22,628 nucleotides of DNA from Vitrella brassicaformis CCMP3155 (taxonomy: Eukaryota > Protista > Chromerida): assembly GCA_001179505.1 (NCBI GenBank), contig CDMY01000768.1:1-22628 (forward strand), read 5' to 3'. Below are positions 360 to 14,814 of the stretch, in pieces. Positions within the stretch are counted from its first letter, which is position 1. Every line of letters starts with the position of its first letter. Under the pieces are notes generated by a model that saw only the letters and a list, made by a program, of their open reading frames with translations, searched no databases and was not told the DNA's origin. Made by a program: the position numbers and the translations under genes.

Positions 360-589
360 CCAAATCGATCCCCATCTGCGAGCTTTTGCCTACGAGCAGA
401 AGCAGAAGCAGGTGGACAGCTGAAGTCTCTGGAAGATCACGTGAAAGATCACAAACGAAGGGTGCGCGTTGATGCATCCCTGCACACAAACCTGGCTGAT
501 GACGCGCACTTCCTGTTCCTCTGTGTATGTGTTGGTTGCCTCATCTGTCTGATCAGATCAGCATCGTGTTGTGCGTTGAGCTGATCAGC

Positions 590-1896
590 ATGCAGAACGG
601 CAGCAGCGAGGGCGGCAAGGCGGGCACCTGGGTGGAGGGTCCCTTCGCCATCGACACGTCGCTGGTGCACGCCGCCATCGACCCAGACCCCACCACAGGC
701 GCCATCCTGCCTCCCGTCTACCAGAACACCACCTTCATTCAGGAGTCGGTGGCGCAGTACCTCGAGAAGGGCTTCTCATACTCGAGGACAGGCAACCCCA
801 CTGTGAGGGTGCTGGAGAGGAAGATAGCCGAGCTGGAGGGAGGGTATGGCGCCACGTGCGTGTCAACGGGCATGGCCGCCACATTCACCGTCTTCTCGGC
901 GCTGCTCAAGCCCGGCGACCACGTCGTCATTACCAACTGCAGCTACGGCGGGACCAACAGGTGTGCCCGGGTGCACTTCTCCAAGTACGGCATCGACTTC
1001 TCGTTTGTGGATTTCCGCGACATCAAGACGGTCGAGGCCGCCATCACCGAGAGGACCAAGATGCTCTTCAGCGAGTCGCCGACGAACCCGACGCTCTTCC
1101 TGGCTGACGTCGAGGCCATCTCGCAGCTGGCCAAGGCCAGGGGCCTCGTGCACGTGTGCGACAGCACCTTCGCCACGCCCCTCATCATGAAACCCCTCGA
1201 CCTGGGCGCCGACATCGTCATCCAGTCGACGACCAAGTTCTACGACGGCCACAACATCACTGTTGGCGGGGCGGTGGTGTGCAAGACCAAGGAGCTCGAC
1301 GACACCATGCACTTCCACCAGAACGTCCTGGGCAACATCATGTCGCCGCAGGTGGCCTTCTACCAGCTGCAGACCACCAAGACCATGGCCTTGAGGGTGC
1401 GGCAGCAGAGCGCGACGGCGCAGCGAGTGGCGGAGTTCCTCGAGAAGCACCCCAAGGTGGACAAAGTGGTGTACCCGGGCCTCAAGAGCTTCCCGCAGAA
1501 GGAGCTGGCCGACAAGCAGCACAAGGACGGGCTGCACGGGGGGATGCTCTGGTTTGAGGTCAAGGGAGGCACCGACGCAGGTAGACCCCTCACACACATA
1601 CACGACACCACAGACGGCGGCAAGAAACCCATCCATCTCTCCCATGTGTGTATGTGATCTGTGTGTATGAAGGTCGTCGTTTGATGGACACGTGCCAGCG
1701 TCCGTGGTCCCTGTGCGAGAACCTGGGTGCCACCGAGTCGATCATCACCTGCCCGGCGGTCTTCACACATGCGAACATGCTGCGGGAGGACCGCCTCAAG
1801 GTCGGCCTCACCGACGGGTTCGTCCGCGTCAGCTGCGGCATCGAGGACGCAGACGACCTCGTCCGCTCACTCAAGATCGCACTCGACAATCTGTGA
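590..1896 (+). CDS. Cys/Met metabolism PLP-dependent enzyme (cystathionine gamma-lyase / gamma-synthase family), 2 exons: 590-1580, 1673-1896, 404 aa
   Basis: Family motifs PPVYQNTTF, YSRTGNPT, TGMAA, ESPTNP, DSTFATP, PLP-lysine motif QSTTKFYDGH, SLCENLGATES and VRVSCGIED. The 92-nt intron GTAGAC...TGAAG (1581-1672) joins GGTDA-G-RRLMDT in frame. The exact substrate specificity cannot be assigned from sequence. Confidence 0.93.
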
Positions 1897-6703: not shown

Positions 6704-9424
6704 ATGGTGAAGAGGAAGCGAGGGGGGGAGCGCGAGGTGCGCTGCACACTCCGACGTCGGCCTGCTGACTCCAGTGCGGCCACCGAGGCAACTCTTGTCG
6801 ACACAGGCGACTCCAACGCCAAGTAAGCACATGGGAGCCAGGCGGGGGAGTCAGTGGGACCTAGTCAATTCGGCTTTCTATCTCTGTGTGTGCGCGTTTG
6901 TGTGTGAGCTCTCTCAGAAGCGACAAGTGCGGATGCGACTTCGCACACGATTTCGTGCGTGACATCGTCGAGGGAAGGAATGCGAAGGTCTACGAAGCCG
7001 AACAGCTCAGCACGGGCATCATCGTCGCCGTGAAGGAGGCCAAGCCTGACGGCGACTCAGCAGCTATCGCGAGAGCCGGCCGGAAAGAGGTTCGCATAAT
7101 GCAACTGCTGGCTGGTCACAAGCACGTCGTGAGGTTCGTCACCTCCTGCACGTGCAAGGCAAAGGGTGCAGGCGGCAACGGTGCCCTGATGATGGAGCTG
7201 TGCACAGGCACGCTTGACGGCTTCCGATTCCGGCAATACCCCACTGGTTTGCCTCCCGAGGTGCTGCGCCGAGTCCTCCGTCAGTTGGTGTCTGCTATGG
7301 CCCATCTGGAGGACAAGGGCGTCTGGCACTGCGACCTCAAGCCCGAAAACATCCTGATCAAACACCAAGGTACAGCACACTCACACCTTGCACACACATG
7401 GATGGAACGCTGTCTGTCTGCTTTTTGTCTGTTGCAGGAGGGCGTCTGTGTACCAAGCTTGGCGATTTCGGCAACAGCCGAGATGCCGACGAAACTTGTC
7501 GAATGACACAAACCGAGATGCAGACGCCATCTCACCGGGCGCCAGAGGTGCATCTGAAGGCGGCACTGGCTGCTGCAGCAAATGGTGAGTGAACGGCACT
7601 GAACGCACTCGTATCTGTATCTATCACACACACTGCTCTCGCTGGGTCGGTCCCTCGTTCTATGGTGGGTTTTTGGCTTGTTGCATGATGAGTAGCTTGC
7701 CCTCTTCTGACCTGCATTGTTCGTCCATCATGCGACGTGTCTGATGACTATGTATTGTGAGTAGAAGGCTCCCGCAGAGAGCTGGTGGGGTGCATGGTGT
7801 GAGCGAGGACCTATGTGTGCATCGGGGCATGGGGATGTGGTGAAACTCTCAGACACACAGACCACCCTGACACCATAAATCGCCAACCACCACTCAAGCT
7901 TTGCTATGTGCACGGCTCATGAGGTGAGAACTCGCCAGTATCGGTTGGAATATTTGGGTTGTCCTGAAATGGACTGGCATGAGACGGCATGGCGTGTTGA
8001 ATGAACGCTACATGTCGCATGCCCTCATGGCAATGCTGACATGCGCGTCAGCGGAGCTCGAGTCCCATCGATCAGCCGTATGGCCAGCAGAATTCCAAGA
8101 TGCATAGACAGACTCGTAGATAGGCGGAGACAGACAACGTAAACAGGCGGAGAGCAACAGACAACTCGGGGGCCAGACAGACAGACAGACAGACAGGCGG
8201 GCAGACAGACAGACAGGCAGGCAGGCAGACAGTGAGGGAGGGAGGATTGTGTGGTGGATCGATGTCTGTGTCGAGCCGCACCTGTCGAGCCGCTTAATGA
8301 ACCACGTATTTGTTCCCCATACTTGGCCGGCAACAAATACAAGACAGTGTCTCTTCCGACGCTGTGAAAAGACAAGTGTCTCTTGTCACGCTGTCTTTTC
8401 ACATAAGACACACGAGTGTGCGCCTCACAGTCGCACTCGATGTGTGTCAGACACAGACACGCCCACCGACGCACAAGACAAGGCGCCGTTGTCCCCCCTC
8501 TGCGTACGGGCGCACGACGTTTTTCGAGACACGGGGAGGCGCCACCAGTGGTGTTTGACTTTTGTCGCTTTTTGTCTCATTCTCTTTCTCTGGCCGTCTG
8601 AGACATTGACTGACTCGGCGGACCCCTCTCAACTGACTACACACATACATGACTAACTTACTAATTAATTGTATGAGTGCGTGGATGCCTGAATGATGCA
8701 TATGGGGAGGGACCGACTCAGCGAGAGACAAACACAGACACACGAAGACGAACAGCATGCTGACACAACAGACATGCCATGTTGTCTGTTCCTTCTTTGG
8801 CGTCTCCATTGCAGGGAGAAAGACAAACTTCCCCGAGACCATCCACAACACGGCCAAGACGGATATGTGGTCCGTCGCCACTACGGCCTTCAAGGTAGGT
8901 GCAAGAGACACACCATGCGCACAAACAAATACGCGAGGCCTCACGTGACTCCTCTCTCTTCTCTGTGTCCATCTGGCAGGCGGCCTTCGGTGTGAGTCTG
9001 TTTCCATACCATAATGATGCTCGTCAGATGCTCCAAGACATCTTCAGCGTCATGGGCGTGCCGGAGGAGGAGGAGTGGTCGGGGATCGCCGACGTCCTCT
9101 CGCAGATTGGCATGGTACTGCCGGATGCCCGTGGGTCGAGCACCGTCGCCATCTATAGGCGCCTTACAGCCCATGTGCTGCTACAGCACAAGGCCTCGAA
9201 AGCGCCCCTCTTGGCGAAGGCCAACGAAAAATACTTGCACCAATTCATCGCCTTCATGGCCAGGTAAGCATGACAGACACCTATCAACCTGCCCCCCATG
9301 TCCTATCCTCCTGTGCTGCGTGCCTGTCTGTTTGTGTGTCAGGTTGGTGTGCCCTCCAGCCTCTCGCATGACGGCCAAAGACGCCCTGAACCACTTCTTC
9401 CCGGCGAAAGGAGACGACGACTGA
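6704..9424 (+). CDS. Ser/Thr protein kinase, divergent CMGC/CDK-like; exons 6704-6822, 6918-7369, 7438-7584, 8815-8894, 8980-9263, 9343-9424 (387 aa)
   Basis: Motifs VAVK (II), alphaC Glu (RKEVRIM), HCDLKPENIL (VIb), KLGDFG (VII), TPSHRAPE (VIII), KTDMWSV (IX), CDK-like QMLQDIFSVMGVPEEEEW insert and RMTAKDALNH (XI). All five introns are GT-AG and phase-consistent, and the total of 1164 nt is divisible by 3. Confidence 0.9.
8174..8231 (+). repeat. Compound (CAGA)n/(CAGG)n microsatellite inside the long kinase intron
   Basis: cagacagacagacagacagacaggcgggcagacagacagacaggcaggcaggcagaca read directly. Confidence 0.85.
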
Positions 9425-9713: not shown

Positions 9714-10312
9714 TCCTCTGTCAGTTTTTCAATTGCATGGGGCACGTGGCAGAAAGTTCGGCTGCGTGTGCGACGCGTATGTGTGCTGGAACTGTTTTCT
9801 TTTTTCATCCCGTCTCTTGTCTTGACTTCGGCATGGCTGGCAGACTGGGTGCCTGCGTTGTCTTAAGGAGGGAGGGCACATGTATATGCATATCTGTGTA
9901 TTTGTATGTGTTCGTGTGTGTCGTACATGGCCTGGCTGTAGCGGTGATGTCTCGTCGGCCATCCCGCCGCCTGCCAATCGCCGGCCGGCCGGTCGGCCGG
10001 CGAGGCTGATCCAGACTGCTGTGTCTTTTCTGATGTACAGCATTAGTAAGTAAGGCACTCCCTTGGAGTGATTTCAACGCAATCGCCTCCCCGCAGCAAG
10101 GGGAGGAGGAGGGGGCGGGGGTGAGGGATGCCTGTATGGACAATCGGTCGGCTGCATGTCTGAGGTCCATGGGCATGGTCTTTTTTCTACCAACCGGGCT
10201 GCCTGCACGCTCTTCTCGGGGAGGGAAATCACCAACTCGTCTTCTTTTTGTCGCACTTGTCGGTCACTTTTCGCTCCACCTCACCTGTGATTCGTGCGTG
10301 TTTGTCTTTTGT

Positions 10313-10372
10313 GTCTGTCTGTCTGTCTGTCTGTCTGTCTGGTTGGCTGGCTGGCTGGCTGGCTGGCTGGCT
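10313..10372 (+). repeat. Compound (GTCT)7-(GGCT)7 microsatellite upstream of the deiodinase-like gene
   Basis: Read directly. Confidence 0.9.
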
Positions 10373-10725
10373 GCGTCATGGAACAGTGGGACACCATCGT
10401 TGTACGTGGGACAGACGCGAGCACAATTCTTCTATCCACGAAGCAACACAACGTCTTTTCCTCTGCAGTATACACACATCCACAGGCAGGTCTTCACGCT
10501 CAATGTGACAACCCCCACACCTGCATCAAACACACACAGATGCACACAAGCATGGACGAGGCAAAGTGTGAATTGAATCATAGATCGTCGAACATCTCTG
10601 TGTTTCTCAACTGTCTGTGTGTGTTGGCATCCAACGCGACGCACTGCGACGATGATTACGGCCGTTTCACCTCTCTGCGAATGATCGGCGAAGCTCGCAA
10701 CATGTGAAGGCCGCGAGCGGGCAAG

Positions 10726-12323
10726 ATGGCTCTGCGTGAGCACATGCTGTTTCTCATTGGCATCATGATTGATGCGTTGAAGGTGATCATGACAAACAAG
10801 GCTGCACCCACCTCCCCACGTCCCATGCAGCACCTTGCGTGCTCTCATCCTTTCTTCTCCTGCAGATCGTGCCCATCATGGTTGTGTCCTTCATCTACAA
10901 CTACATGCTCTTCCTGCGTGCTCCCCTAATGAAGTTCGCGCCCAGGACAGGTGGCAGCACCTACGATGAGGAGAGCGTCATCCGCGATGCCCTGTCGTGG
11001 ACGGTGGCCAAGGAGCTGTGGACGGCCGCCCGCATGGCAAGAGGCGCCGAGGTCAAGGAGGGCGAGGTGGCGCCAAACCCGACGGTTTGCACACTGCAAG
11101 GAGAAGCCAGGCCGCTGTTTGACGTGTTGCGGGAGAAGAAAGAGCACGACACGCAGAAGGCCTACGTCCTCAACTTCGGGAGCTGTTCCTGGTTAGTCAC
11201 ACACACCCCAACAGCGCAAGGCGGGACAACGAACCGACCAGCCCCTTGCTCCTGTTAACGCGTGTGTGTGTGTGTGCGTCTGTGCAGAGGTCCGTTCGCG
11301 GGCCACGCCGACCAATACAGGTCGGCCGAGCTCGCGATGGGGAGGGAGGCGGTGTTTCTCACCATTTATGTCAAGGTGGGCGGGTATAACATAACAGAGC
11401 ACGACACCCGCTGTCGATTCATTGTTTCTCTTTGTTGCATCATCAGGAGGCCCATCCGACGGATGGCTGGCACGTTGAGGGGAACGTCGAGGTGCGGCAC
11501 CACCAGTCCCTGGAGGAGCGCATCGACGTGGCTTCCCGGTTCAAGGCCACCATGGACCTCGGCCACATGGTCGTCGACGCCATGGACGCTGGAGCGGCCA
11601 TCAAATACGGTCAGTCACCCACAGGCAACCCAACCACCCACCCACCCACCCACCAATGCAAAGGCTCCCCTGTGTGTGTGTTCTTCAAGCCGCTTGGCCC
11701 GATCGGCTGTTCGTGCTGGATGAGCAGATGACGGTAGTCTACGTGGGCGGCCACGGCCCCTTTGGGTACAAGGTGCCCGACGTCGTCAAGTTCCTGTGCC
11801 AGCGGCTCGGGAAGGACCCTGCCACAGTGCTGGGCAAGATATCGCACAGTGACGACATGGGAGGCCTTTCTGCTGAAGTCGACGCACTGCCGATCTACAA
11901 GGCTGACGTGAGTGCTGCCGCCCATGGTATCGCATATGCATATGGTGTTGTCGTGGGCCGGGGCAGGATCTTGCCAATGCTGGGTTTGTGTTGTACCACT
12001 TTCCCGGCTGCAAATTCTGCGAGCGTGTCGAGAAGGTGCTGGCAGAGAAGAAGATGGCGTCGTGCCTGCCCATTCGCGACATCCATGACGCATCCAGCGG
12101 CCAGGACAACAAACAGGAGCTCATCACACGGGGCGGCAAGGGACAGGTGCGAAACCAGCAAGGAGGAACAGGGAGAAGCGGCAACAAGGGACTGATCCGT
12201 CATGGTCGTGTGTGTGTGGTGCTTCTGCAGGTGCCCGCGCTGCTGCTGCCAAGTGGTTCGATTCTGTACGACTCCAACATGATCATCCGCTTCATCAACA
12301 CACACTTTACCACACAGGGGTAG
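10726..12323 (+). CDS. DIO: Iodothyronine deiodinase-like selenoprotein fused to a C-terminal glutaredoxin-like (CxxC) domain; exons 10726-10782, 10866-11191, 11288-11375, 11447-11609, 11690-11907, 11967-12146, 12231-12323 (374 aa, Sec at the spliced TGA)
   Basis: Hydrophobic N-terminal anchor (MLFLIGIMIDALKIVPIMVVSFIYNYMLFL). Deiodinase motifs YVLNFGSCS-U-GPF, FLTIYVKEAHPTDGW, HQSLEERIDVA, VVDAMD, YAAWPDRLFV and GGHGPFGY. Then LYHFPGCKFCERV...ELITRGGKGQVPAL...YDSNMIIRFI (Grx/GST-N fold). All six introns are GT-AG and phase-consistent (1125 nt). A SECIS lies downstream. Confidence 0.92.
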
Positions 12324-12731
12324 ACAGACAGACCAGGGCCGGAAGGGGAAGGGCTCTGCCTTTTTTCCGCAGAGAGAGAGGGGGGGCCGAGCTGCTGCAT
12401 GGATGCCTAAGTGGCTGTAGGATGCTGCTGCGTGCGAAGTGGACGAGTCCCTCACCGTTGACCGATCGAGGAGCCCCGCATTCACCGACAGCTGCGTGTA
12501 TCCGTCTCTTGCCTGCGTCAGCCAGCCCCGCCCGAAAGGGGCGCTGCTGCATCTTGTGCTGTACACTAGCGTTGTGTTTCGTGCCCTGTGTGTTTGGGGC
12601 ACCAAATGTTCTGTCATGGACAAGAGCTGTCAAGAGCTCTCTGTGTCGGCTGTTTGTGTGTGCCATGAGCAAGAATACCTGCCTGCGGCTGCGATGGATG
12701 GATGGATGTGTGTGTCGTGTGGTGCTGGCGT

Positions 12732-12813
12732 AGCTGTTGCGCACGAGTGACGCGGACGGGTCAAACTCTGCAGAGAGACACACGTCTGCTGATATATGGA
12801 TGCAGCGACAGCT
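12732..12813 (+). promoter_or_regulatory. Eukaryotic SECIS element (type II) in the 3' UTR of the deiodinase-like gene
   Basis: Helix I: AGCTGTTGC (12732-40) pairs with GCGACAGCT (12805-13). Core: G-TGAC (12747-51) opposite TGAT (12790-93), giving tandem G.A pairs. Helix II: GCGGACG (12752-58) pairs with CGTCTGC (12783-89). Unpaired AAA at 12763-65, 12 nt after the TGA. Apical minihelix CTCT/AGAG (12766-69/12774-77). Confidence 0.88.
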
Positions 12814-14204
12814 GATGGACACACTGCCGTCATGTATGCGTCACATGCGTGGCGTGAGTGTGTGTGCGGCTCTCGGGCGGCTTTGTGTACGTTGATGGAC
12901 GATGCCTTGATAGCGAAGAGACAAACGGATTGCGCTCCCTGATTTCATTTCAAACAGCGCTGCACACATCGTTGTCTCTACAATGAATGCACCTGACTTC
13001 GTTATCCCTCTGTCCTCTCATCCACCCACTTGCCAAGCCATCGCATCCCTCCCTCCCTCTCCCATCACACTTCATCGCCATCCATCCATCCATCCATCCA
13101 CCCCACATCAGCACTCCCCCACCCACAGGCACATGCACCCCCCCATGTGTGTCAATCGGAAAAAACCAGCGCTTGCATCTCTTCTCGCTCGAAAAAGTGA
13201 CTGCCTCTCTCTTTGTGCTGTGTCACTCGTAGTGTGCGATGGGGTGGTGGACATCCCACTATATGCAGACAGACAGACAGACAGACACACTGGATCGAAG
13301 CACACACCCACACGCGCATCTCCGGCGCACGGTCGAAAACTCTCTCGCACAAGGCATTCAGCAACAAACCTGTACGTAGCGGCAGACAGCTGTGGATCCC
13401 CTTTGCCTCACGGACTCGATCAGTCACGCTCGACGTCATATACAGTGCTGCTGACTGCCACATCAGCAGCACCGCGTTCGACGCCCGGTGCAATCGGGTC
13501 GGATCCCGTGAGTGAGGCAGAAGAGAGAGACGGACAGCGCAGCCACTCAGTCAGACAGTGCGGCACGGCGGACGTGGCAGGCACAGCATACAGACAGACA
13601 GACAAATCGACTCACTCAGTCATACAGACGTACAGGGAAAAATCACAGGTGGCGACGGACACGGGACGCAGATCATCGACCCGCGTGAGCAGTCGTGGGG
13701 AGCAGGAAGTGTATTCAGCCCGCTGGTGCTTTGGTCAGCCAGCGGGACCGAACTGCACCACCCACACCAACACGACAGCCACACGGGACCGGTTCGCATC
13801 GCACCGTCATCCGATTCTCGCTACATGTGTCGGTCCAGCCAGACCAGGCCAGGCGACGAAATATGCACTCACGCATGCATGAGGTGTATGTGCGTGTGTG
13901 TGTGTGGACTCACTCACGAAAAAGCAGCAAGGAACAAGACGGACAAACCACAGCACACACGTGCGTGCGCATCCACACAGACAGACAAACACTCACCCAA
14001 TCACTGACTCATCATGCTTGGTGGGAAGAATCGCCCACACAAGCGCAGTGGCCTCCGCCGCTCCACTCACTCATCTCCCAGTGTCGCAAGCACCACCGCT
14101 CCCACGTATATACTCAACACCACACAAACAAACTCACGGCATCCAGCGGGCCAGTCTCTCAGATATTCAGTGTGTGTCTGTGTCTGTCAGTCAGCCGTCT
14201 GTCA

Positions 14205-14684
14205 TCATTTCTCGGAGGTGTGTTTGTAGCCTTTGTTGAAGATGGGTTGGTAGTGCTTGGACTTGCGGCGCAGGGACCTTAGCAGGTAGGTGTTGTCGCC
14301 GTGGTCCTTCTTCTCAGTCGTTGACGGCGTGTATGTGCCGCCCTGCACCACGCACACAAACAGAGAGCCCAGATGCACTCAGCGTGTTGTGCATGTCTCT
14401 CTCTGCAGTGTGCTTGCTGTGTGTACCGGGCTGCCGTAAGGCGACTGGGCCATCATGCGTGTGTTCCAGGAGCCCCTGAAGCAGTAAGTGGCGGGCACCG
14501 ACACGAACCCCTCAGTCGCCTCCAGAATGGTAGTCGCATCCACGTCCTGCAGAGAGGACAGGCAACCAGGACAGAGTGGATGCATCCCTTGCCTCAAGCA
14601 TGCCCCATTGCTCACGTTGGATGCAGCGGTGGCCATGCTCAGCACAGCAAGGAGGGCCAAAGCAGCAGCAAGAAAACGCATCAT
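14205..14684 (-). CDS. Small secreted protein of unknown function, 3 exons (14684-14616, 14546-14427, 14342-14205), 108 aa
   Basis: MMRFLAAALALLAVLSMATAASN|DVDATTILEATEGFVSVPATYCFRGSWNTRMMAQSPYGSP|GGTYTPSTTEKKDHGDNTYLLRSLRRKSKHYQPIFNKGYKHTSEK*. Classic signal peptide, two phase-0 GT-AG introns, and a double TGA stop followed by a CAGA-rich 3' UTR. Confidence 0.75.
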
Positions 14685-14814
14685 CGTCGTAACAGACAGA
14701 TGGATGGAAAGATGCACTAAGACAGCGTGTTGATGGCACAGGGCACCAGCGGCGTGATGGCTGCACAGAAAAACGCGAGCTTGTGCAGACCTCTCCGCAG
14801 AAACTTCTCGAAGC

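What the first reader, a model, noticed from the sequence alone, without database searches (positions are those of the whole stretch)
10726..12323. Deiodinase-like selenoprotein fused to a dithiol glutaredoxin-like domain: a putative self-reducing dehalogenase in a protist
Seen: the deiodinase frame has no stop after the domain ends (...KVPDVVKFLCQRLGKDPATVLGK...LPIYKAD). A 59-nt phase-0 intron (GTGAGT 11908 ... GGCAG 11966) joins it to DLANAGFVLYHFPGCKFCERVEKV...ELITRGGKGQ|VPALLLPSGSILYDSNMIIRFI, which has the CxxC, the cis-Pro VP motif and the DS motif of Grx/GST-N folds. Established: animal deiodinases (DIO1-3) are single-domain thioredoxin-fold enzymes that need an external thiol reductant; the physiological partner is unsettled, with thioredoxin and glutaredoxin systems proposed. 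Inference: the fusion is Rosetta-stone evidence that a glutaredoxin recycles the oxidised Sec, and the organism (probably a marine alveolate with no thyroid) may use it for iodine or organohalogen metabolism. I know of no description of this architecture but cannot search.
Basis: partly seen in the sequence, partly recalled or inferred. Interest (0 to 1): 0.9.

Follow-up and report, generated by a model that had tools for sequence, protein, structure and literature searches.

The report
Deiodinase-like selenoprotein fused to glutaredoxin
The alga Vitrella brassicaformis expresses a membrane-anchored, selenium-containing relative of animal thyroid-hormone deiodinases joined on one chain to a glutaredoxin-like domain, which hints, without proving, that glutathione chemistry restores this kind of enzyme after each reaction.

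Summary
A 7-exon gene (10726-12323, + strand) encodes 374 codons. It has an N-terminal hydrophobic anchor and a deiodinase-family domain whose catalytic TGA is split TG|A by an intron. A linker of about 44 residues leads to a C-terminal CKFC glutaredoxin/GST-N domain. Transcript contigs from three public RNA data sets show every intron removed as predicted, including the 59-nt intron 11908-11966 that joins the two domains.

A type II SECIS-like hairpin (12732-12813, core UGAC/UGAU) lies 424 nt after the stop. Rfam does not score it, and chance alone gives about 0.1 such hits per UTR.

The organism is Vitrella brassicaformis. Two near-identical paralogues (CEM27681.1, CEM08771.1; 40% identical to this gene) have the same architecture and share three intron positions. 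Their public models hide the Sec codon. Two unidentified eukaryotes carry Sec-deiodinase-like genes fused to a classical glutaredoxin. Otherwise the architecture was absent from hundreds of inspected deiodinase-like hits.

This scan has already reported the same architecture on other DNA of this genome (the paralogues). I found no paper describing it.

The mechanism, in which the glutaredoxin domain and GSH recycle the oxidised Sec, is inferred. The substrate is unknown, and the thyroxine carboxylate contacts (Tyr257, Arg275 of mouse Dio3) are not conserved. I class it as a new variant of a known kind.

The parts
10726..10782 (+). Exon 1: start codon and the first half of the N-terminal hydrophobic anchor. 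An in-frame TGA lies upstream at 10705-10707, and the transcript contigs start at about 10711-10730.
10866..11191 (+). Exon 2: rest of the membrane anchor and the N-terminal part of the deiodinase domain, ending in NFGSCS plus the first two bases (TG) of the Sec codon.
   Evidence: T4_deiodinase profile 38-112
11190..11288 (+). Sec codon TG|A, split by the 96-nt intron 11192-11287. It is residue 128, in the context S-C-S-U-G-P-F.
   Evidence: pieces 10864-11191 and 11288-11373 abut in the RNA contigs; TGA at L001 394-396
11288..11375 (+). Exon 3: last base of the Sec codon and helix alpha-1 of the deiodinase domain.
11447..11609 (+). Exon 4: EAHPTDGW motif (Glu200, His202 and Trp207 of mouse Dio3), His219 and Arg225 equivalents.
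   Evidence: (39.4 bits alone)
11690..11907 (+). Exon 5: end of the deiodinase domain (WPDRL...GGHGPFGY) and the linker of about 44 residues.
   Evidence: linker pLDDT 54-68
11908..11966 (+). 59-nt phase-0 intron at the domain junction (KAD|DL). It is removed in all three RNA contigs, and the paralogue has an intron at the same position (KAT|DL).
11967..12146 (+). Exon 6: first half of the Grx/GST-N domain, with beta-1, CKFC (12009-12020) at the start of alpha-1, beta-2 and alpha-2.
12231..12323 (+). Exon 7: VP (putative cis-Pro), beta-3, beta-4, the DS motif, alpha-3 and the TAG stop (12321-12323). There is no GST C-terminal helical domain.
12732..12813 (+). Candidate type II SECIS: long helix I, core 5' G-UGAC (12747-12751) and 3' UGAU (12790-12793), 11-bp helix II, unpaired AAA (12763-12765), and a 3-bp mini-stem.
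   Evidence: core consensus UGAN/KGAW from PMC3753652; no Rfam hit
12324..13619 (+). 3' UTR as far as the shortest RNA contig reaches (L003). Longer contigs run on to about 14600 and may merge with a convergent neighbour's transcript.

Best explanation
The gene makes one polypeptide of 374 residues. It has an N-terminal single-pass membrane anchor and a deiodinase-family thioredoxin-fold domain. The nucleophile of that domain is selenocysteine 128, read from a UGA with the help of a 3'-UTR SECIS. A flexible linker then leads to a small dithiol (CKFC) glutaredoxin-like domain of the Grx2/omega-GST N-terminal type.

Proposed cycle (inferred):
1. Sec attacks an oxidising substrate, either a carbon-bound halogen as in animal deiodinases or a peroxide as in peroxiredoxins, and becomes Se-I or Se-OH.
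2. The neighbouring 'proximal' Cys126 (C-x-U, as in DIO1 and DIO3) closes a selenenyl-sulfide.
3. The tethered glutaredoxin domain, in cis or across a dimer, reduces that bond through its CxxC.
4. Glutathione then re-reduces the glutaredoxin domain.

The logic is that of peroxiredoxin-glutaredoxin hybrids and of thioredoxin-glutathione reductase.

Shown: gene structure, splicing, domain identities, conservation of the catalytic network, and recurrence of the architecture. Inferred: Sec insertion, direction of electron flow, GSH dependence, cytosolic orientation, and the substrate.
For: Gene and fusion:
- The exons and reading frame are set out.
- All introns are removed in RNA contigs of three data sets, with no base differences, so the TGA is not edited away.

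Deiodinase identity:
- Pfam T4_deiodinase scores 92.7 bits.
- The best solved relatives by sequence are mouse Dio3 (4TR3, 1.3e-15) and Dio2 (9H48).
- The same two are best by fold, with probability 1.00.
- Equivalents of Ser167, Cys168, Sec170, Tyr197, Glu200, His202, Trp207, His219, Arg225, Arg260 and Tyr280 are kept (numbering checked against PMC7506546).

Sec:
- The TGA sits exactly at the catalytic position, and strong homology continues after it.
- The Vitrella paralogue (L006, SCS-U-PPF) and the genes in L005 and L009 (SWS-U-PC) have TGA at the same place.
- The hairpin at 12732-12813 meets the UGAN/KGAW core, has unpaired AAA 12 nt after the core and a mini-stem, and is the only hit of my scanner on the + strand.
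- The paralogue has the same CGAGUGAC core on a different helix sequence.

Glutaredoxin domain:
- GST_N_3 scores 39.4 bits and Glutaredoxin 24.9 bits.
- The AlphaFold2 model shows beta1-alpha1-beta2-alpha2-beta3-beta4-alpha3 with the CxxC at the start of alpha-1.
- Fold matches include a Chlorella glutaredoxin-GSH complex, mycoredoxin-1, Gtt2 and TDR1.
- The best sequence matches are a glutathione S-transferase homolog (4G10) and TDR1.

Functional link:
- The architecture is kept between paralogues only 40% identical, with three shared intron positions including the domain junction.
- It recurs with a classical CQYC/CQFC...TVP...GGCDD glutaredoxin in two other eukaryotes.
- The nearest language-model neighbours are bacterial AhpC/TSA-glutaredoxin hybrids.

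Chemistry precedent:
- In human DIO1 the proximal Cys forms a Se-S bond with Sec, and that bond is what GSH reduces (PMC9141512).
Against: - There is no biochemical evidence of any kind.
- Rfam's SECIS models do not score the hairpin, even at E<=10 on a 221-nt stretch. They also miss the canonical-looking AUGA elements in L005, so they seem insensitive to these elements.
- My scanner finds 1.7 hits per 22.6 kb of random sequence. That makes about 0.1 expected in a 1.3-kb UTR, or about 0.013 for a hit as stable as this one.
- Glutaredoxin itself did not reduce human DIO1(U126C) or DIO2; GSH alone was enough for DIO1 (PMC9141512, PMC11592359).
- The domain lacks the GG/CDD motif of class I glutaredoxins and resembles GST N-domains, so it could bind GSH for another purpose.
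- The distal Cys239 and the thyroxine carboxylate contacts Tyr257 and Arg275 are not conserved.
- The full-length structure, and so the Sec-to-CxxC geometry, could not be modelled here.
Confidence: 0.55

Rival explanations
1. The fused domain is not a reductant of the Sec. It would be a GST-like glutathione-handling module that binds GSH or a glutathionylated or halogenated substrate and presents it to the Sec site. Alternatively it carries out its own thiol-transferase or deglutathionylation reaction, as omega-class GSTs and the GST homolog of PDB 4G10 may do, with the deiodinase-like domain acting before or after it in one pathway.
For: - The best sequence matches of the domain are GST N-domains (4G10, TDR1, Gtt2), not glutaredoxins.
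- GST_N_3 and GST_N_2 score higher than Glutaredoxin.
- It has the GST-type DS motif instead of GG/CDD.
- GSH alone reduces human DIO1 (PMC9141512).
Against: - A CxxC dithiol is typical of glutaredoxins and Grx2, not of conjugating GSTs.
- The helical GST C-domain that forms the substrate site is absent.
- In the other lineage the fused domain is an unambiguous class I glutaredoxin (GRX_euk 78 bits).
Confidence: 0.2
2. The enzyme is a glutathione/glutaredoxin-dependent selenoperoxidase, peroxiredoxin-like, and has nothing to do with halogens. The deiodinase name would only reflect the best-studied animal members.
For: - Many relatives of this domain also match AhpC-TSA and Redoxin.
- The nearest Atlas clusters are AhpC-TSA + glutaredoxin hybrids.
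- The Dio3 thyroxine carboxylate contacts Tyr257 and Arg275 are not conserved.
- The deiodinase fold is described as peroxiredoxin-like (PMC11592359).
Against: - The window's protein matches T4_deiodinase only, with no AhpC-TSA hit at E<=0.1.
- It keeps the deiodinase-specific EAHPxDGW loop with His202, Trp207 and His219.
- This rival concerns the substrate only and fits the same recycling mechanism.
Confidence: 0.3
3. The UGA is read as stop. The mRNA would yield only a 127-residue membrane fragment, or would be degraded. The downstream deiodinase-glutaredoxin frame would be untranslated, or made as a 230-residue protein from the internal ATG.
For: - Rfam finds no SECIS.
- The hairpin's statistical support on its own is modest.
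- Public ORF callers split the transcript into 127- and 230-residue products.
Against: - The TGA is at the exact catalytic position in four genes of at least two organisms, each followed in frame by the rest of the domain and each with a SECIS-like hairpin in the 3' UTR.
- A thioredoxin fold cut at beta1/alpha1 could not function.
- The mRNA is well represented in three data sets.
- The same genome is reported to hold other selenoprotein genes (scan notes, unchecked).
Confidence: 0.07

Closest known systems
Vertebrate iodothyronine deiodinases DIO1-3 (Pfam PF00837; structures 4TR3 Dio3, 9H48 Dio2)
   Same: - N-terminal membrane anchor.
- Thioredoxin-fold catalytic domain.
- S-C-(T/S)-U active site with the proximal Cys.
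- EAHPxDGW loop, with Tyr197, Glu200, His202, Trp207, His219 and Arg225 equivalents.
- Best sequence and fold matches.
   Different: - A C-terminal glutaredoxin-like domain on the same chain.
- Distal Cys239 replaced by Gly.
- Thyroxine carboxylate contacts changed: Tyr257 to Trp and Arg275 to His.
- UGPF instead of UPPF.
- The host is an alga with no known thyroid hormones.
Vitrella brassicaformis paralogues CEM27681.1 / CEM08771.1 (UniProt A0A0G4GE88 / A0A0G4F8U6, 'GST N-terminal domain-containing protein')
   Same: - Same architecture: anchor, Sec-deiodinase-like domain, linker, then a CxxC GST_N_3-type domain.
- Three shared intron positions (before EAHP, at KAD|DL, at Q|VPAL).
- GUGA-type SECIS-like hairpin.
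   Different: - Only about 40% identical.
- CPFC instead of CKFC.
- The intron near the Sec codon lies 6 nt after it instead of inside it.
- A longer N-terminal region.
- Their public models remove 33 nt (VLNFGSCSUPP) as part of an intron.
Dictyostelium discoideum deiodinase-like selenoprotein (Lobanov et al. 2007, PMC2375036)
   Same: - A Sec-containing deiodinase homologue in a protist without thyroid hormones.
- Type II SECIS with unpaired AAA.
   Different: No fused glutaredoxin domain is reported. I did not compare the sequences here.
Peroxiredoxin-glutaredoxin hybrids (Haemophilus influenzae hybrid Prx5, PDB 1NM3; bacterial AhpC-TSA+Glutaredoxin clusters)
   Same: - A thioredoxin-fold peroxidase-type domain followed by a C-terminal glutaredoxin domain that recycles it with GSH (established knowledge for 1NM3).
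- Nearest neighbours by language-model features.
- 1NM3 appears among the whole-length fold matches (rank 28, weak).
   Different: - The catalytic domain there is a Cys peroxiredoxin, not a Sec deiodinase-family domain.
- The window's protein has no AhpC-TSA match.
- Those hybrids are bacterial and soluble.
Thioredoxin glutathione reductase (TGR; e.g. PDB 2V6O, 3H4K)
   Same: A selenoenzyme with a glutaredoxin domain fused on the same chain, so that electrons pass between Sec and the glutaredoxin CxxC (established knowledge). There are weak sequence hits to its glutaredoxin domain (E about 0.9).
   Different: - The glutaredoxin is N-terminal.
- The Sec sits in a C-terminal GCUG tail of a flavoenzyme.
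- The catalytic domain is unrelated.
Omega-class GST and other GST N-terminal domains (4G10, TDR1 4AGS, Gtt2 3ERF); E. coli Grx2 by recollection only
   Same: - Best sequence matches of residues 285-374 are the three solved GSTs.
- Active-site Cys at the start of alpha-1, a (Q/T)VP cis-Pro loop, and a D/E-S motif for the glutamyl group of GSH. The Grx2 resemblance is from memory and was not tested here.
   Different: - It stands alone, without the helical GST C-terminal domain.
- It has a full CxxC dithiol.

Membership tests
Iodothyronine deiodinase family (Pfam PF00837) | Profile match above the curated cut-off (27 bits) | tested here: met
   92.7 bits on the post-Sec piece and 17.9 bits on the pre-Sec piece, collinear profile positions 38-112 and 116-233
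Iodothyronine deiodinase family (Pfam PF00837) | Sec (or Cys) nucleophile in the S-C-T-U type motif at the beta1-alpha1 turn | tested here: met
   NFGSCS-TGA-GPF. The TGA is kept in the mRNA contigs.
Iodothyronine deiodinase family (Pfam PF00837) | Deiodinase-specific loop and proton-relay residues (Tyr197, Glu200, His202, Trp207, His219, Arg225 of mouse Dio3) | tested here: met
   All are aligned and identical in the phmmer alignment to 4TR3. The numbering was checked against PMC7506546.
Iodothyronine deiodinase family (Pfam PF00837) | Fold like the solved Dio2/Dio3 catalytic cores | tested here: met
   AlphaFold2 model of the post-Sec part (pLDDT 84-94 in this domain). Foldseek ranks 9H48 and 4TR3 first and second, with probability 1.00. 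The pre-Sec strands were not in the model.
Iodothyronine deiodinase family (Pfam PF00837) | Iodothyronine binding residues (Arg275 and Tyr257 holding the amino-acid carboxylate) | tested here: not met
   Arg275 aligns with His and Tyr257 with Trp. The paralogue has Pro at the Arg275 position.
Iodothyronine deiodinase family (Pfam PF00837) | Reductive deiodination activity | not testable with these tools
   Needs an enzyme assay.
Eukaryotic selenoprotein | In-frame UGA at a position that is Sec or Cys in homologues, with homology continuing downstream | tested here: met
Eukaryotic selenoprotein | SECIS element in the 3' UTR (kink-turn core UGAN/KGAW, helix II, unpaired AA) | tested here: inconclusive
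   The hairpin at 12732-12813 has UGAC/UGAU, an 11-bp helix II, AAA and a mini-stem. It gets no Rfam SECIS hit, and chance gives about 0.1 hits per UTR with my scanner. The paralogue has a look-alike hairpin with the same CGAGUGAC core.
Eukaryotic selenoprotein | Selenium actually incorporated | not testable with these tools
   Needs 75Se labelling or mass spectrometry.
Class I dithiol glutaredoxin (Pfam PF00462) | Profile match above the cut-off (22.9 bits) | tested here: met
   24.9 bits, marginal. NCBIfam GRX_euk gives only 18.5 bits against a cut-off of 87.
Class I dithiol glutaredoxin (Pfam PF00462) | CxxC at the N-terminus of alpha-1 in a beta1-alpha1-beta2-alpha2-beta3-beta4-alpha3 fold, with a cis-Pro loop before beta-3 | tested here: met
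   CKFC lies at model residues 171-174, with helix 172-183. The strands are 164-167, 192-194, 219-221 and 227-229, QVP lies just before 219, and pLDDT is 71-84. Fold hits include glutaredoxin 4I2U and mycoredoxin 2LQO.
Class I dithiol glutaredoxin (Pfam PF00462) | GG / C-D-D glutathione-binding motif after beta-4 | tested here: not met
   The window has SILYDSNMI, a GST-type D-S. The L005/L009 fusions do have GGCDD.
GST N-terminal domain (PF13417 GST_N_3) / omega-GST type | Profile match above the cut-off (22 bits) | tested here: met
   39.4 bits. GST_N_2 gives 35.2 and GST_N 24.3.
GST N-terminal domain (PF13417 GST_N_3) / omega-GST type | Helical GST C-terminal domain following the N-domain | tested here: not met
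   The protein ends about 10 residues after alpha-3, and there is no GST_C hit.
Peroxiredoxin-glutaredoxin hybrid | AhpC-TSA/Redoxin peroxiredoxin domain N-terminal to the glutaredoxin | tested here: not met
   No AhpC-TSA or Redoxin hit at E<=0.1 on either piece. The resemblance is in architecture only.

The most novel reading that the evidence does not exclude
Deiodinase-family selenoenzymes may be, ancestrally and generally, glutathione/glutaredoxin-coupled. On that reading, this alga uses a self-recycling version to remove iodine or bromine reductively from phenolic organohalogens or iodotyrosine-like compounds. That would be the first dehalogenating deiodinase outside animals, with its reductant built in.
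Probability: 0.25. Interest if true: 0.8.

Novelty: new variant of a known kind. Interest (0 to 1): 0.6.

Why it matters
How oxidised deiodinases are restored in cells has been argued for decades; GSH, thioredoxin, glutaredoxin and peroxiredoxin 3 have all been proposed (PMC9141512, PMC11592359). A natural, expressed fusion of a deiodinase-family Sec domain with a glutaredoxin-type domain offers a simple system for testing the glutathione route. It is kept across diverged paralogues and also occurs with another glutaredoxin subtype elsewhere. The test needs one protein, GSH, glutathione reductase and NADPH.

It also bears on what the widespread non-animal 'deiodinase-like' proteins do. In addition, it exposes a systematic annotation error: public models of the paralogues splice out the Sec codon, and this gene has no full-length model among the proteins searched.

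Tried and rejected
- Rfam (whole window, then 12660-12880 at E<=10, then L005 and L006) found no SECIS. I treat this as insensitivity, because it also missed the canonical-looking AUGA elements in L005.
- My first rigid SECIS scanner missed the candidate. A looser one found it but missed L005 and L006, and it has a background of 1.7 hits per 22.6 kb.
- RNAalifold on the four SECIS candidates failed because MAFFT could not align them, so no covariation statistic is claimed.
- Word-indexed protein searches with one sequence found almost nothing and missed even the 40% paralogue. The full HMMER scan and a profile search were needed.
- Tree of deiodinase domains. With 267 rows it is unresolved, and the fusions need 3 changes while 1 is not excluded. 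The AU test on that set did not finish. On 60 rows, holding all four fusions together is not rejected and even scores higher (p-AU 0.656). Single versus independent origin of the fusion therefore cannot be decided. I dropped my earlier idea that different glutaredoxin subtypes prove independent fusions.
- A full-length structure was not attempted. The tools here take no read-through by reference, and I did not type a 374-residue sequence, so the Sec-to-CxxC distance is unknown.
- The organisms behind L005 (SRR23287147) and L009 (SRR23274246) could not be identified.
- Literature searches for the architecture found nothing. 'The algal selenoproteomes' (PMC7539508) lists other fusions, but not this one and not Vitrella.
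Full report
**1. What is in the sequence**

Reading 10300-12900 and placing GT..AG junctions by script gives seven exons on the + strand:
- 10726-10782
- 10866-11191
- 11288-11375
- 11447-11609
- 11690-11907
- 11967-12146
- 12231-12323

They sum to 1125 nt, which is 374 codons plus TAG. There is one in-frame TGA. Its first two bases end exon 2 (11190-11191) and its third base opens exon 3 (11288), in the context NFGSCS-U-GPF. An in-frame TGA at 10705-10707 lies upstream of the ATG.

It joins ...IYKAD to DLANAGFVLYHFPGCKFC. If it were retained, the frame would run out of register to 12195 (ORF 11656-12195). The fusion therefore depends on splicing.

**2. Splicing is observed**

The search for public runs returned three data sets holding about 0.58 of the sampled words, which is about the exonic share, and DNA runs holding 0.92-1.00. 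Laying them on 10300-13500 gave one contig in each of X1, X6 and X7. Each contig consists of 10714/10711/10730-10780, 10864-11191, 11288-11373, 11445-11608, 11689-11907, 11967-12143 and 12228-13500, with no mismatch. The joints are reported as GT..AG. The DNA contig of X3 is collinear.

The same contigs were fetched as L001 (JGI re-assembly of an MMETSP sample), L002 (ERR558152) and L003 (SRR646408). In L001 the frame is 13-393, TGA at 394-396, then 397-1134 and the stop. The TGA is therefore present in the RNA and not edited. These are assembler contigs, so they show that the spliced form exists and is dominant. They do not show that minor isoforms are absent.

**3. Domains**

Pfam results on the spliced pieces:

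| Piece | Family | Bits | Residues matched | Profile positions |
|---|---|---|---|---|
| post-Sec | T4_deiodinase | 92.7 | 2-119 | 116-233 of 237 |
| pre-Sec | T4_deiodinase | 17.9 | 44-126 | 38-112 |
| post-Sec | GST_N_3 | 39.4 | 164-241 region | |
| post-Sec | GST_N_2 | 35.2 | 164-241 region | |
| post-Sec | Glutaredoxin | 24.9 | 164-241 region | |
| post-Sec | GST_N | 24.3 | 164-241 region | |

Single exons give collinear partial hits.

Against solved structures, the deiodinase part matches only mouse Dio3 (4TR3, 1.3e-15) and Dio2 (9H48, 5.7e-13). I used that alignment and the residue numbers given in PMC7506546 to map the Dio3 residues.
- Kept: Ser167, Cys168, Sec170, Tyr197, Glu200, His202, Trp207, His219, Arg225, Arg260 and Tyr280. 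Thr169 is Ser.
- Not kept: the distal Cys239 is Gly, and the thyroxine carboxylate contacts Tyr257 and Arg275 are Trp and His.

The C-terminal domain's best sequence matches are N-domains of a glutathione S-transferase homolog (4G10, 5.6e-5), Leishmania TDR1 and yeast Gtt2, followed by glutaredoxins.

An AlphaFold2 model of the 246 post-Sec residues was built on a 41-row alignment. Its mean pLDDT is 79.9, with 84-94 in the deiodinase part, 54-68 in the linker and 71-84 in the last domain. The last domain has the glutaredoxin topology: beta 164-167, helix 172-183 starting at the CKFC, beta 192-194, helices, beta 219-221 after QVP, beta 227-229 and helix 231-241.

Foldseek ranks Dio2 and Dio3 first (probability 1.00). 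It also returns a glutaredoxin-GSH complex (4I2U), mycoredoxin-1, Gtt2 and TDR1 for the last domain, and hybrid Prx5 (1NM3) weakly over the whole length. There is no GST C-domain. The protein ends about ten residues after alpha-3.

The first roughly 36 residues are hydrophobic, with more basic residues after them than before. By the positive-inside rule this suggests a signal anchor with the catalytic part in the cytosol, as in animal deiodinases. This is inference from the sequence only.

**4. Is the UGA selenocysteine?**

Evidence for:
- The codon sits at the catalytic position, and homology continues strongly after it.
- The Vitrella paralogue mRNA (L006) has SCS-TGA-PPF. The genes in L005 and L009 have SWS-TGA-PC.
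- A hairpin at 12732-12813, 424 nt after the stop, folds as a type II SECIS. It has a long helix I, an internal loop with 5' G-UGAC and 3' UGAU, an 11-bp helix II, unpaired AAA 12 nt after the core, and a mini-stem (z = -2.8).
- It meets the core consensus UGAN/KGAW quoted in PMC3753652.
- The paralogue has the same CGAGUGAC core on different helices. L005 and L009 have AUGA-type look-alikes.

Cautions:
- Rfam scores none of these elements.
- My scanner finds this as the only + strand hit in the window. It also finds 1.7 hits per 22.6 kb of Markov-simulated sequence. That is about 0.1 expected per 1.3-kb UTR, or about 0.013 for a hit as stable.
- No covariation test was possible.

I put Sec decoding at about 0.9, mainly on the comparative evidence.

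**5. Organism and relatives**

The full HMMER scan of 1.84 billion representatives with the 230-residue transcript ORF (P0001) gave 1264 hits at E<=1e-3. Among the 150 best, only two share both domains.
- **P0003** (398 aa, 40% identical, aligned over query 4-225) is CEM27681.1 of Vitrella brassicaformis CCMP3155, UniProt A0A0G4GE88, 'GST N-terminal domain-containing protein'. It has a near-identical second copy, CEM08771.1. This identifies the genome, in agreement with earlier scan notes.
- **P0015** (210 aa) is the other hit with both domains.

The public 398-residue models lack VLNFGSCSUPP, because the annotator moved a donor site 33 nt upstream to avoid the TGA.

Mapping the paralogue mRNA on its gene shows that three introns lie at the same positions and phase as in the window gene: before EAHP, at KAD|DL versus KAT|DL, and at Q|VPAL. 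The intron near the Sec codon and one other intron differ. The two gene types therefore descend from one already-fused ancestor.

A profile search of the 5.8-billion set gave 345 hits, of which 120 are listed. It adds only P0217 as a further protein with PF00837 + PF00462. P0015 (L005, SRR23287147) and P0217 (L009, SRR23274246) come from unidentified eukaryotes with 62-64% GC. They have a hydrophobic N-terminus, SWS-U-PC with no proximal Cys, a linker of similar length, and a classical class I glutaredoxin (CQYC or CQFC, TVP, GGCDD; GRX_euk 78 bits).

The Vitrella and classical glutaredoxin domains align only over the CxxC helix. Trees of the short deiodinase domain cannot decide between one or two origins, and holding all fusions together is not rejected (p-AU 0.656).

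Other deiodinase-like proteins carry EF-hands, tandem deiodinase domains or CMD domains instead. The glutaredoxin fusion is therefore one rare option among several. The listed hits are the best-scoring ones only, so 'rare' holds for what was inspected.

**6. Mechanism**

What is shown is the architecture and the conserved catalytic residues. The cycle is inferred:
1. Sec128 is oxidised by its substrate.
2. Cys126 forms a selenenyl-sulfide, as shown directly for Cys124-Sec126 of human DIO1, where this bond is the species that GSH reduces (PMC9141512).
3. The tethered CKFC domain reduces that bond.
4. GSH restores the CKFC domain.

Precedents are peroxiredoxin-glutaredoxin hybrids and thioredoxin-glutathione reductase (established knowledge; searches give the resemblances found here).

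The substrate is open. The deiodinase-specific loop argues for deiodinase-like chemistry. The loss of the thyroxine contacts and the family's kinship with peroxiredoxins leave a peroxidase role about as likely.

**7. Novelty and verdict**

I found no paper describing a deiodinase-glutaredoxin fusion or Vitrella selenoproteins. Protist deiodinase homologues are known, for example in Dictyostelium (PMC2375036).

The architecture is in public databases for the paralogues, unnamed and with the active site removed. This scan has already reported it on other pieces of the same genome (s1-235820, s1-218421, s1-199299).

I rate it as a new variant of a known kind.

Noticed in passing
L004:6001-7832 (genomic paralogue) versus L006 (its mRNA): The NCBI models CEM27681.1 and CEM08771.1 avoid the Sec TGA by using a donor site 33 nt upstream of the real one. 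This deletes VLNFGSCSUPP, the active site. The real intron lies 6 nt after the TGA.
   Followed up: yes
L005:13-1290 and L009:3800-5157: Two unidentified eukaryotes (SRR23287147, SRR23274246; 62-64% GC) have Sec deiodinase-like genes (SWS-U-PC, no proximal Cys) fused to a classical class I glutaredoxin. Each has an AUGA-type SECIS-like hairpin in the 3' UTR. L005 retains an intron inside the glutaredoxin.
   Followed up: partly
window 13500-14700: RNA contigs L001 and L002 run about 1.1 kb beyond 13500 and overlap an ORF called on the minus strand (about 14200-14690). L003 stops near 13619. The long contigs may merge two convergent transcripts, so the true 3' end of this mRNA is not fixed.
   Followed up: no
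window 12983-13882 (+): A 299-codon ORF lies inside the 3' UTR and was called as a gene on the transcript contigs. It is low in complexity and has no Pfam match, so it is probably not coding.
   Followed up: partly
window 527-1657 (+) and 6886-7506 (+): Neighbouring ORFs match a Cys/Met-metabolism PLP enzyme (342 bits) and a protein kinase domain (76 bits). These are exon-sized pieces of other genes with no evident link to the finding.
   Followed up: partly
window 1098-1188 (-): My loose SECIS scanner gives two overlapping AUGA hits on the minus strand, opposite the PLP-enzyme ORF. The count is within the chance expectation (1.7 per strand).
   Followed up: no
window 10300-10375: Tandem tetranucleotide repeats, (CTGT)n then (GGCT)n, lie about 350 nt upstream of the start codon. 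Similar GT-rich and CAGA repeats are scattered through introns and UTRs.
   Followed up: no
proteins P0004, P0038, P0056, P0061, P0066, P0118, P0135: Other deiodinase-like proteins in the databases carry tandem deiodinase domains, EF-hands, a CMD domain or a ceramidase domain. The family takes part in many different fusions.
   Followed up: partly
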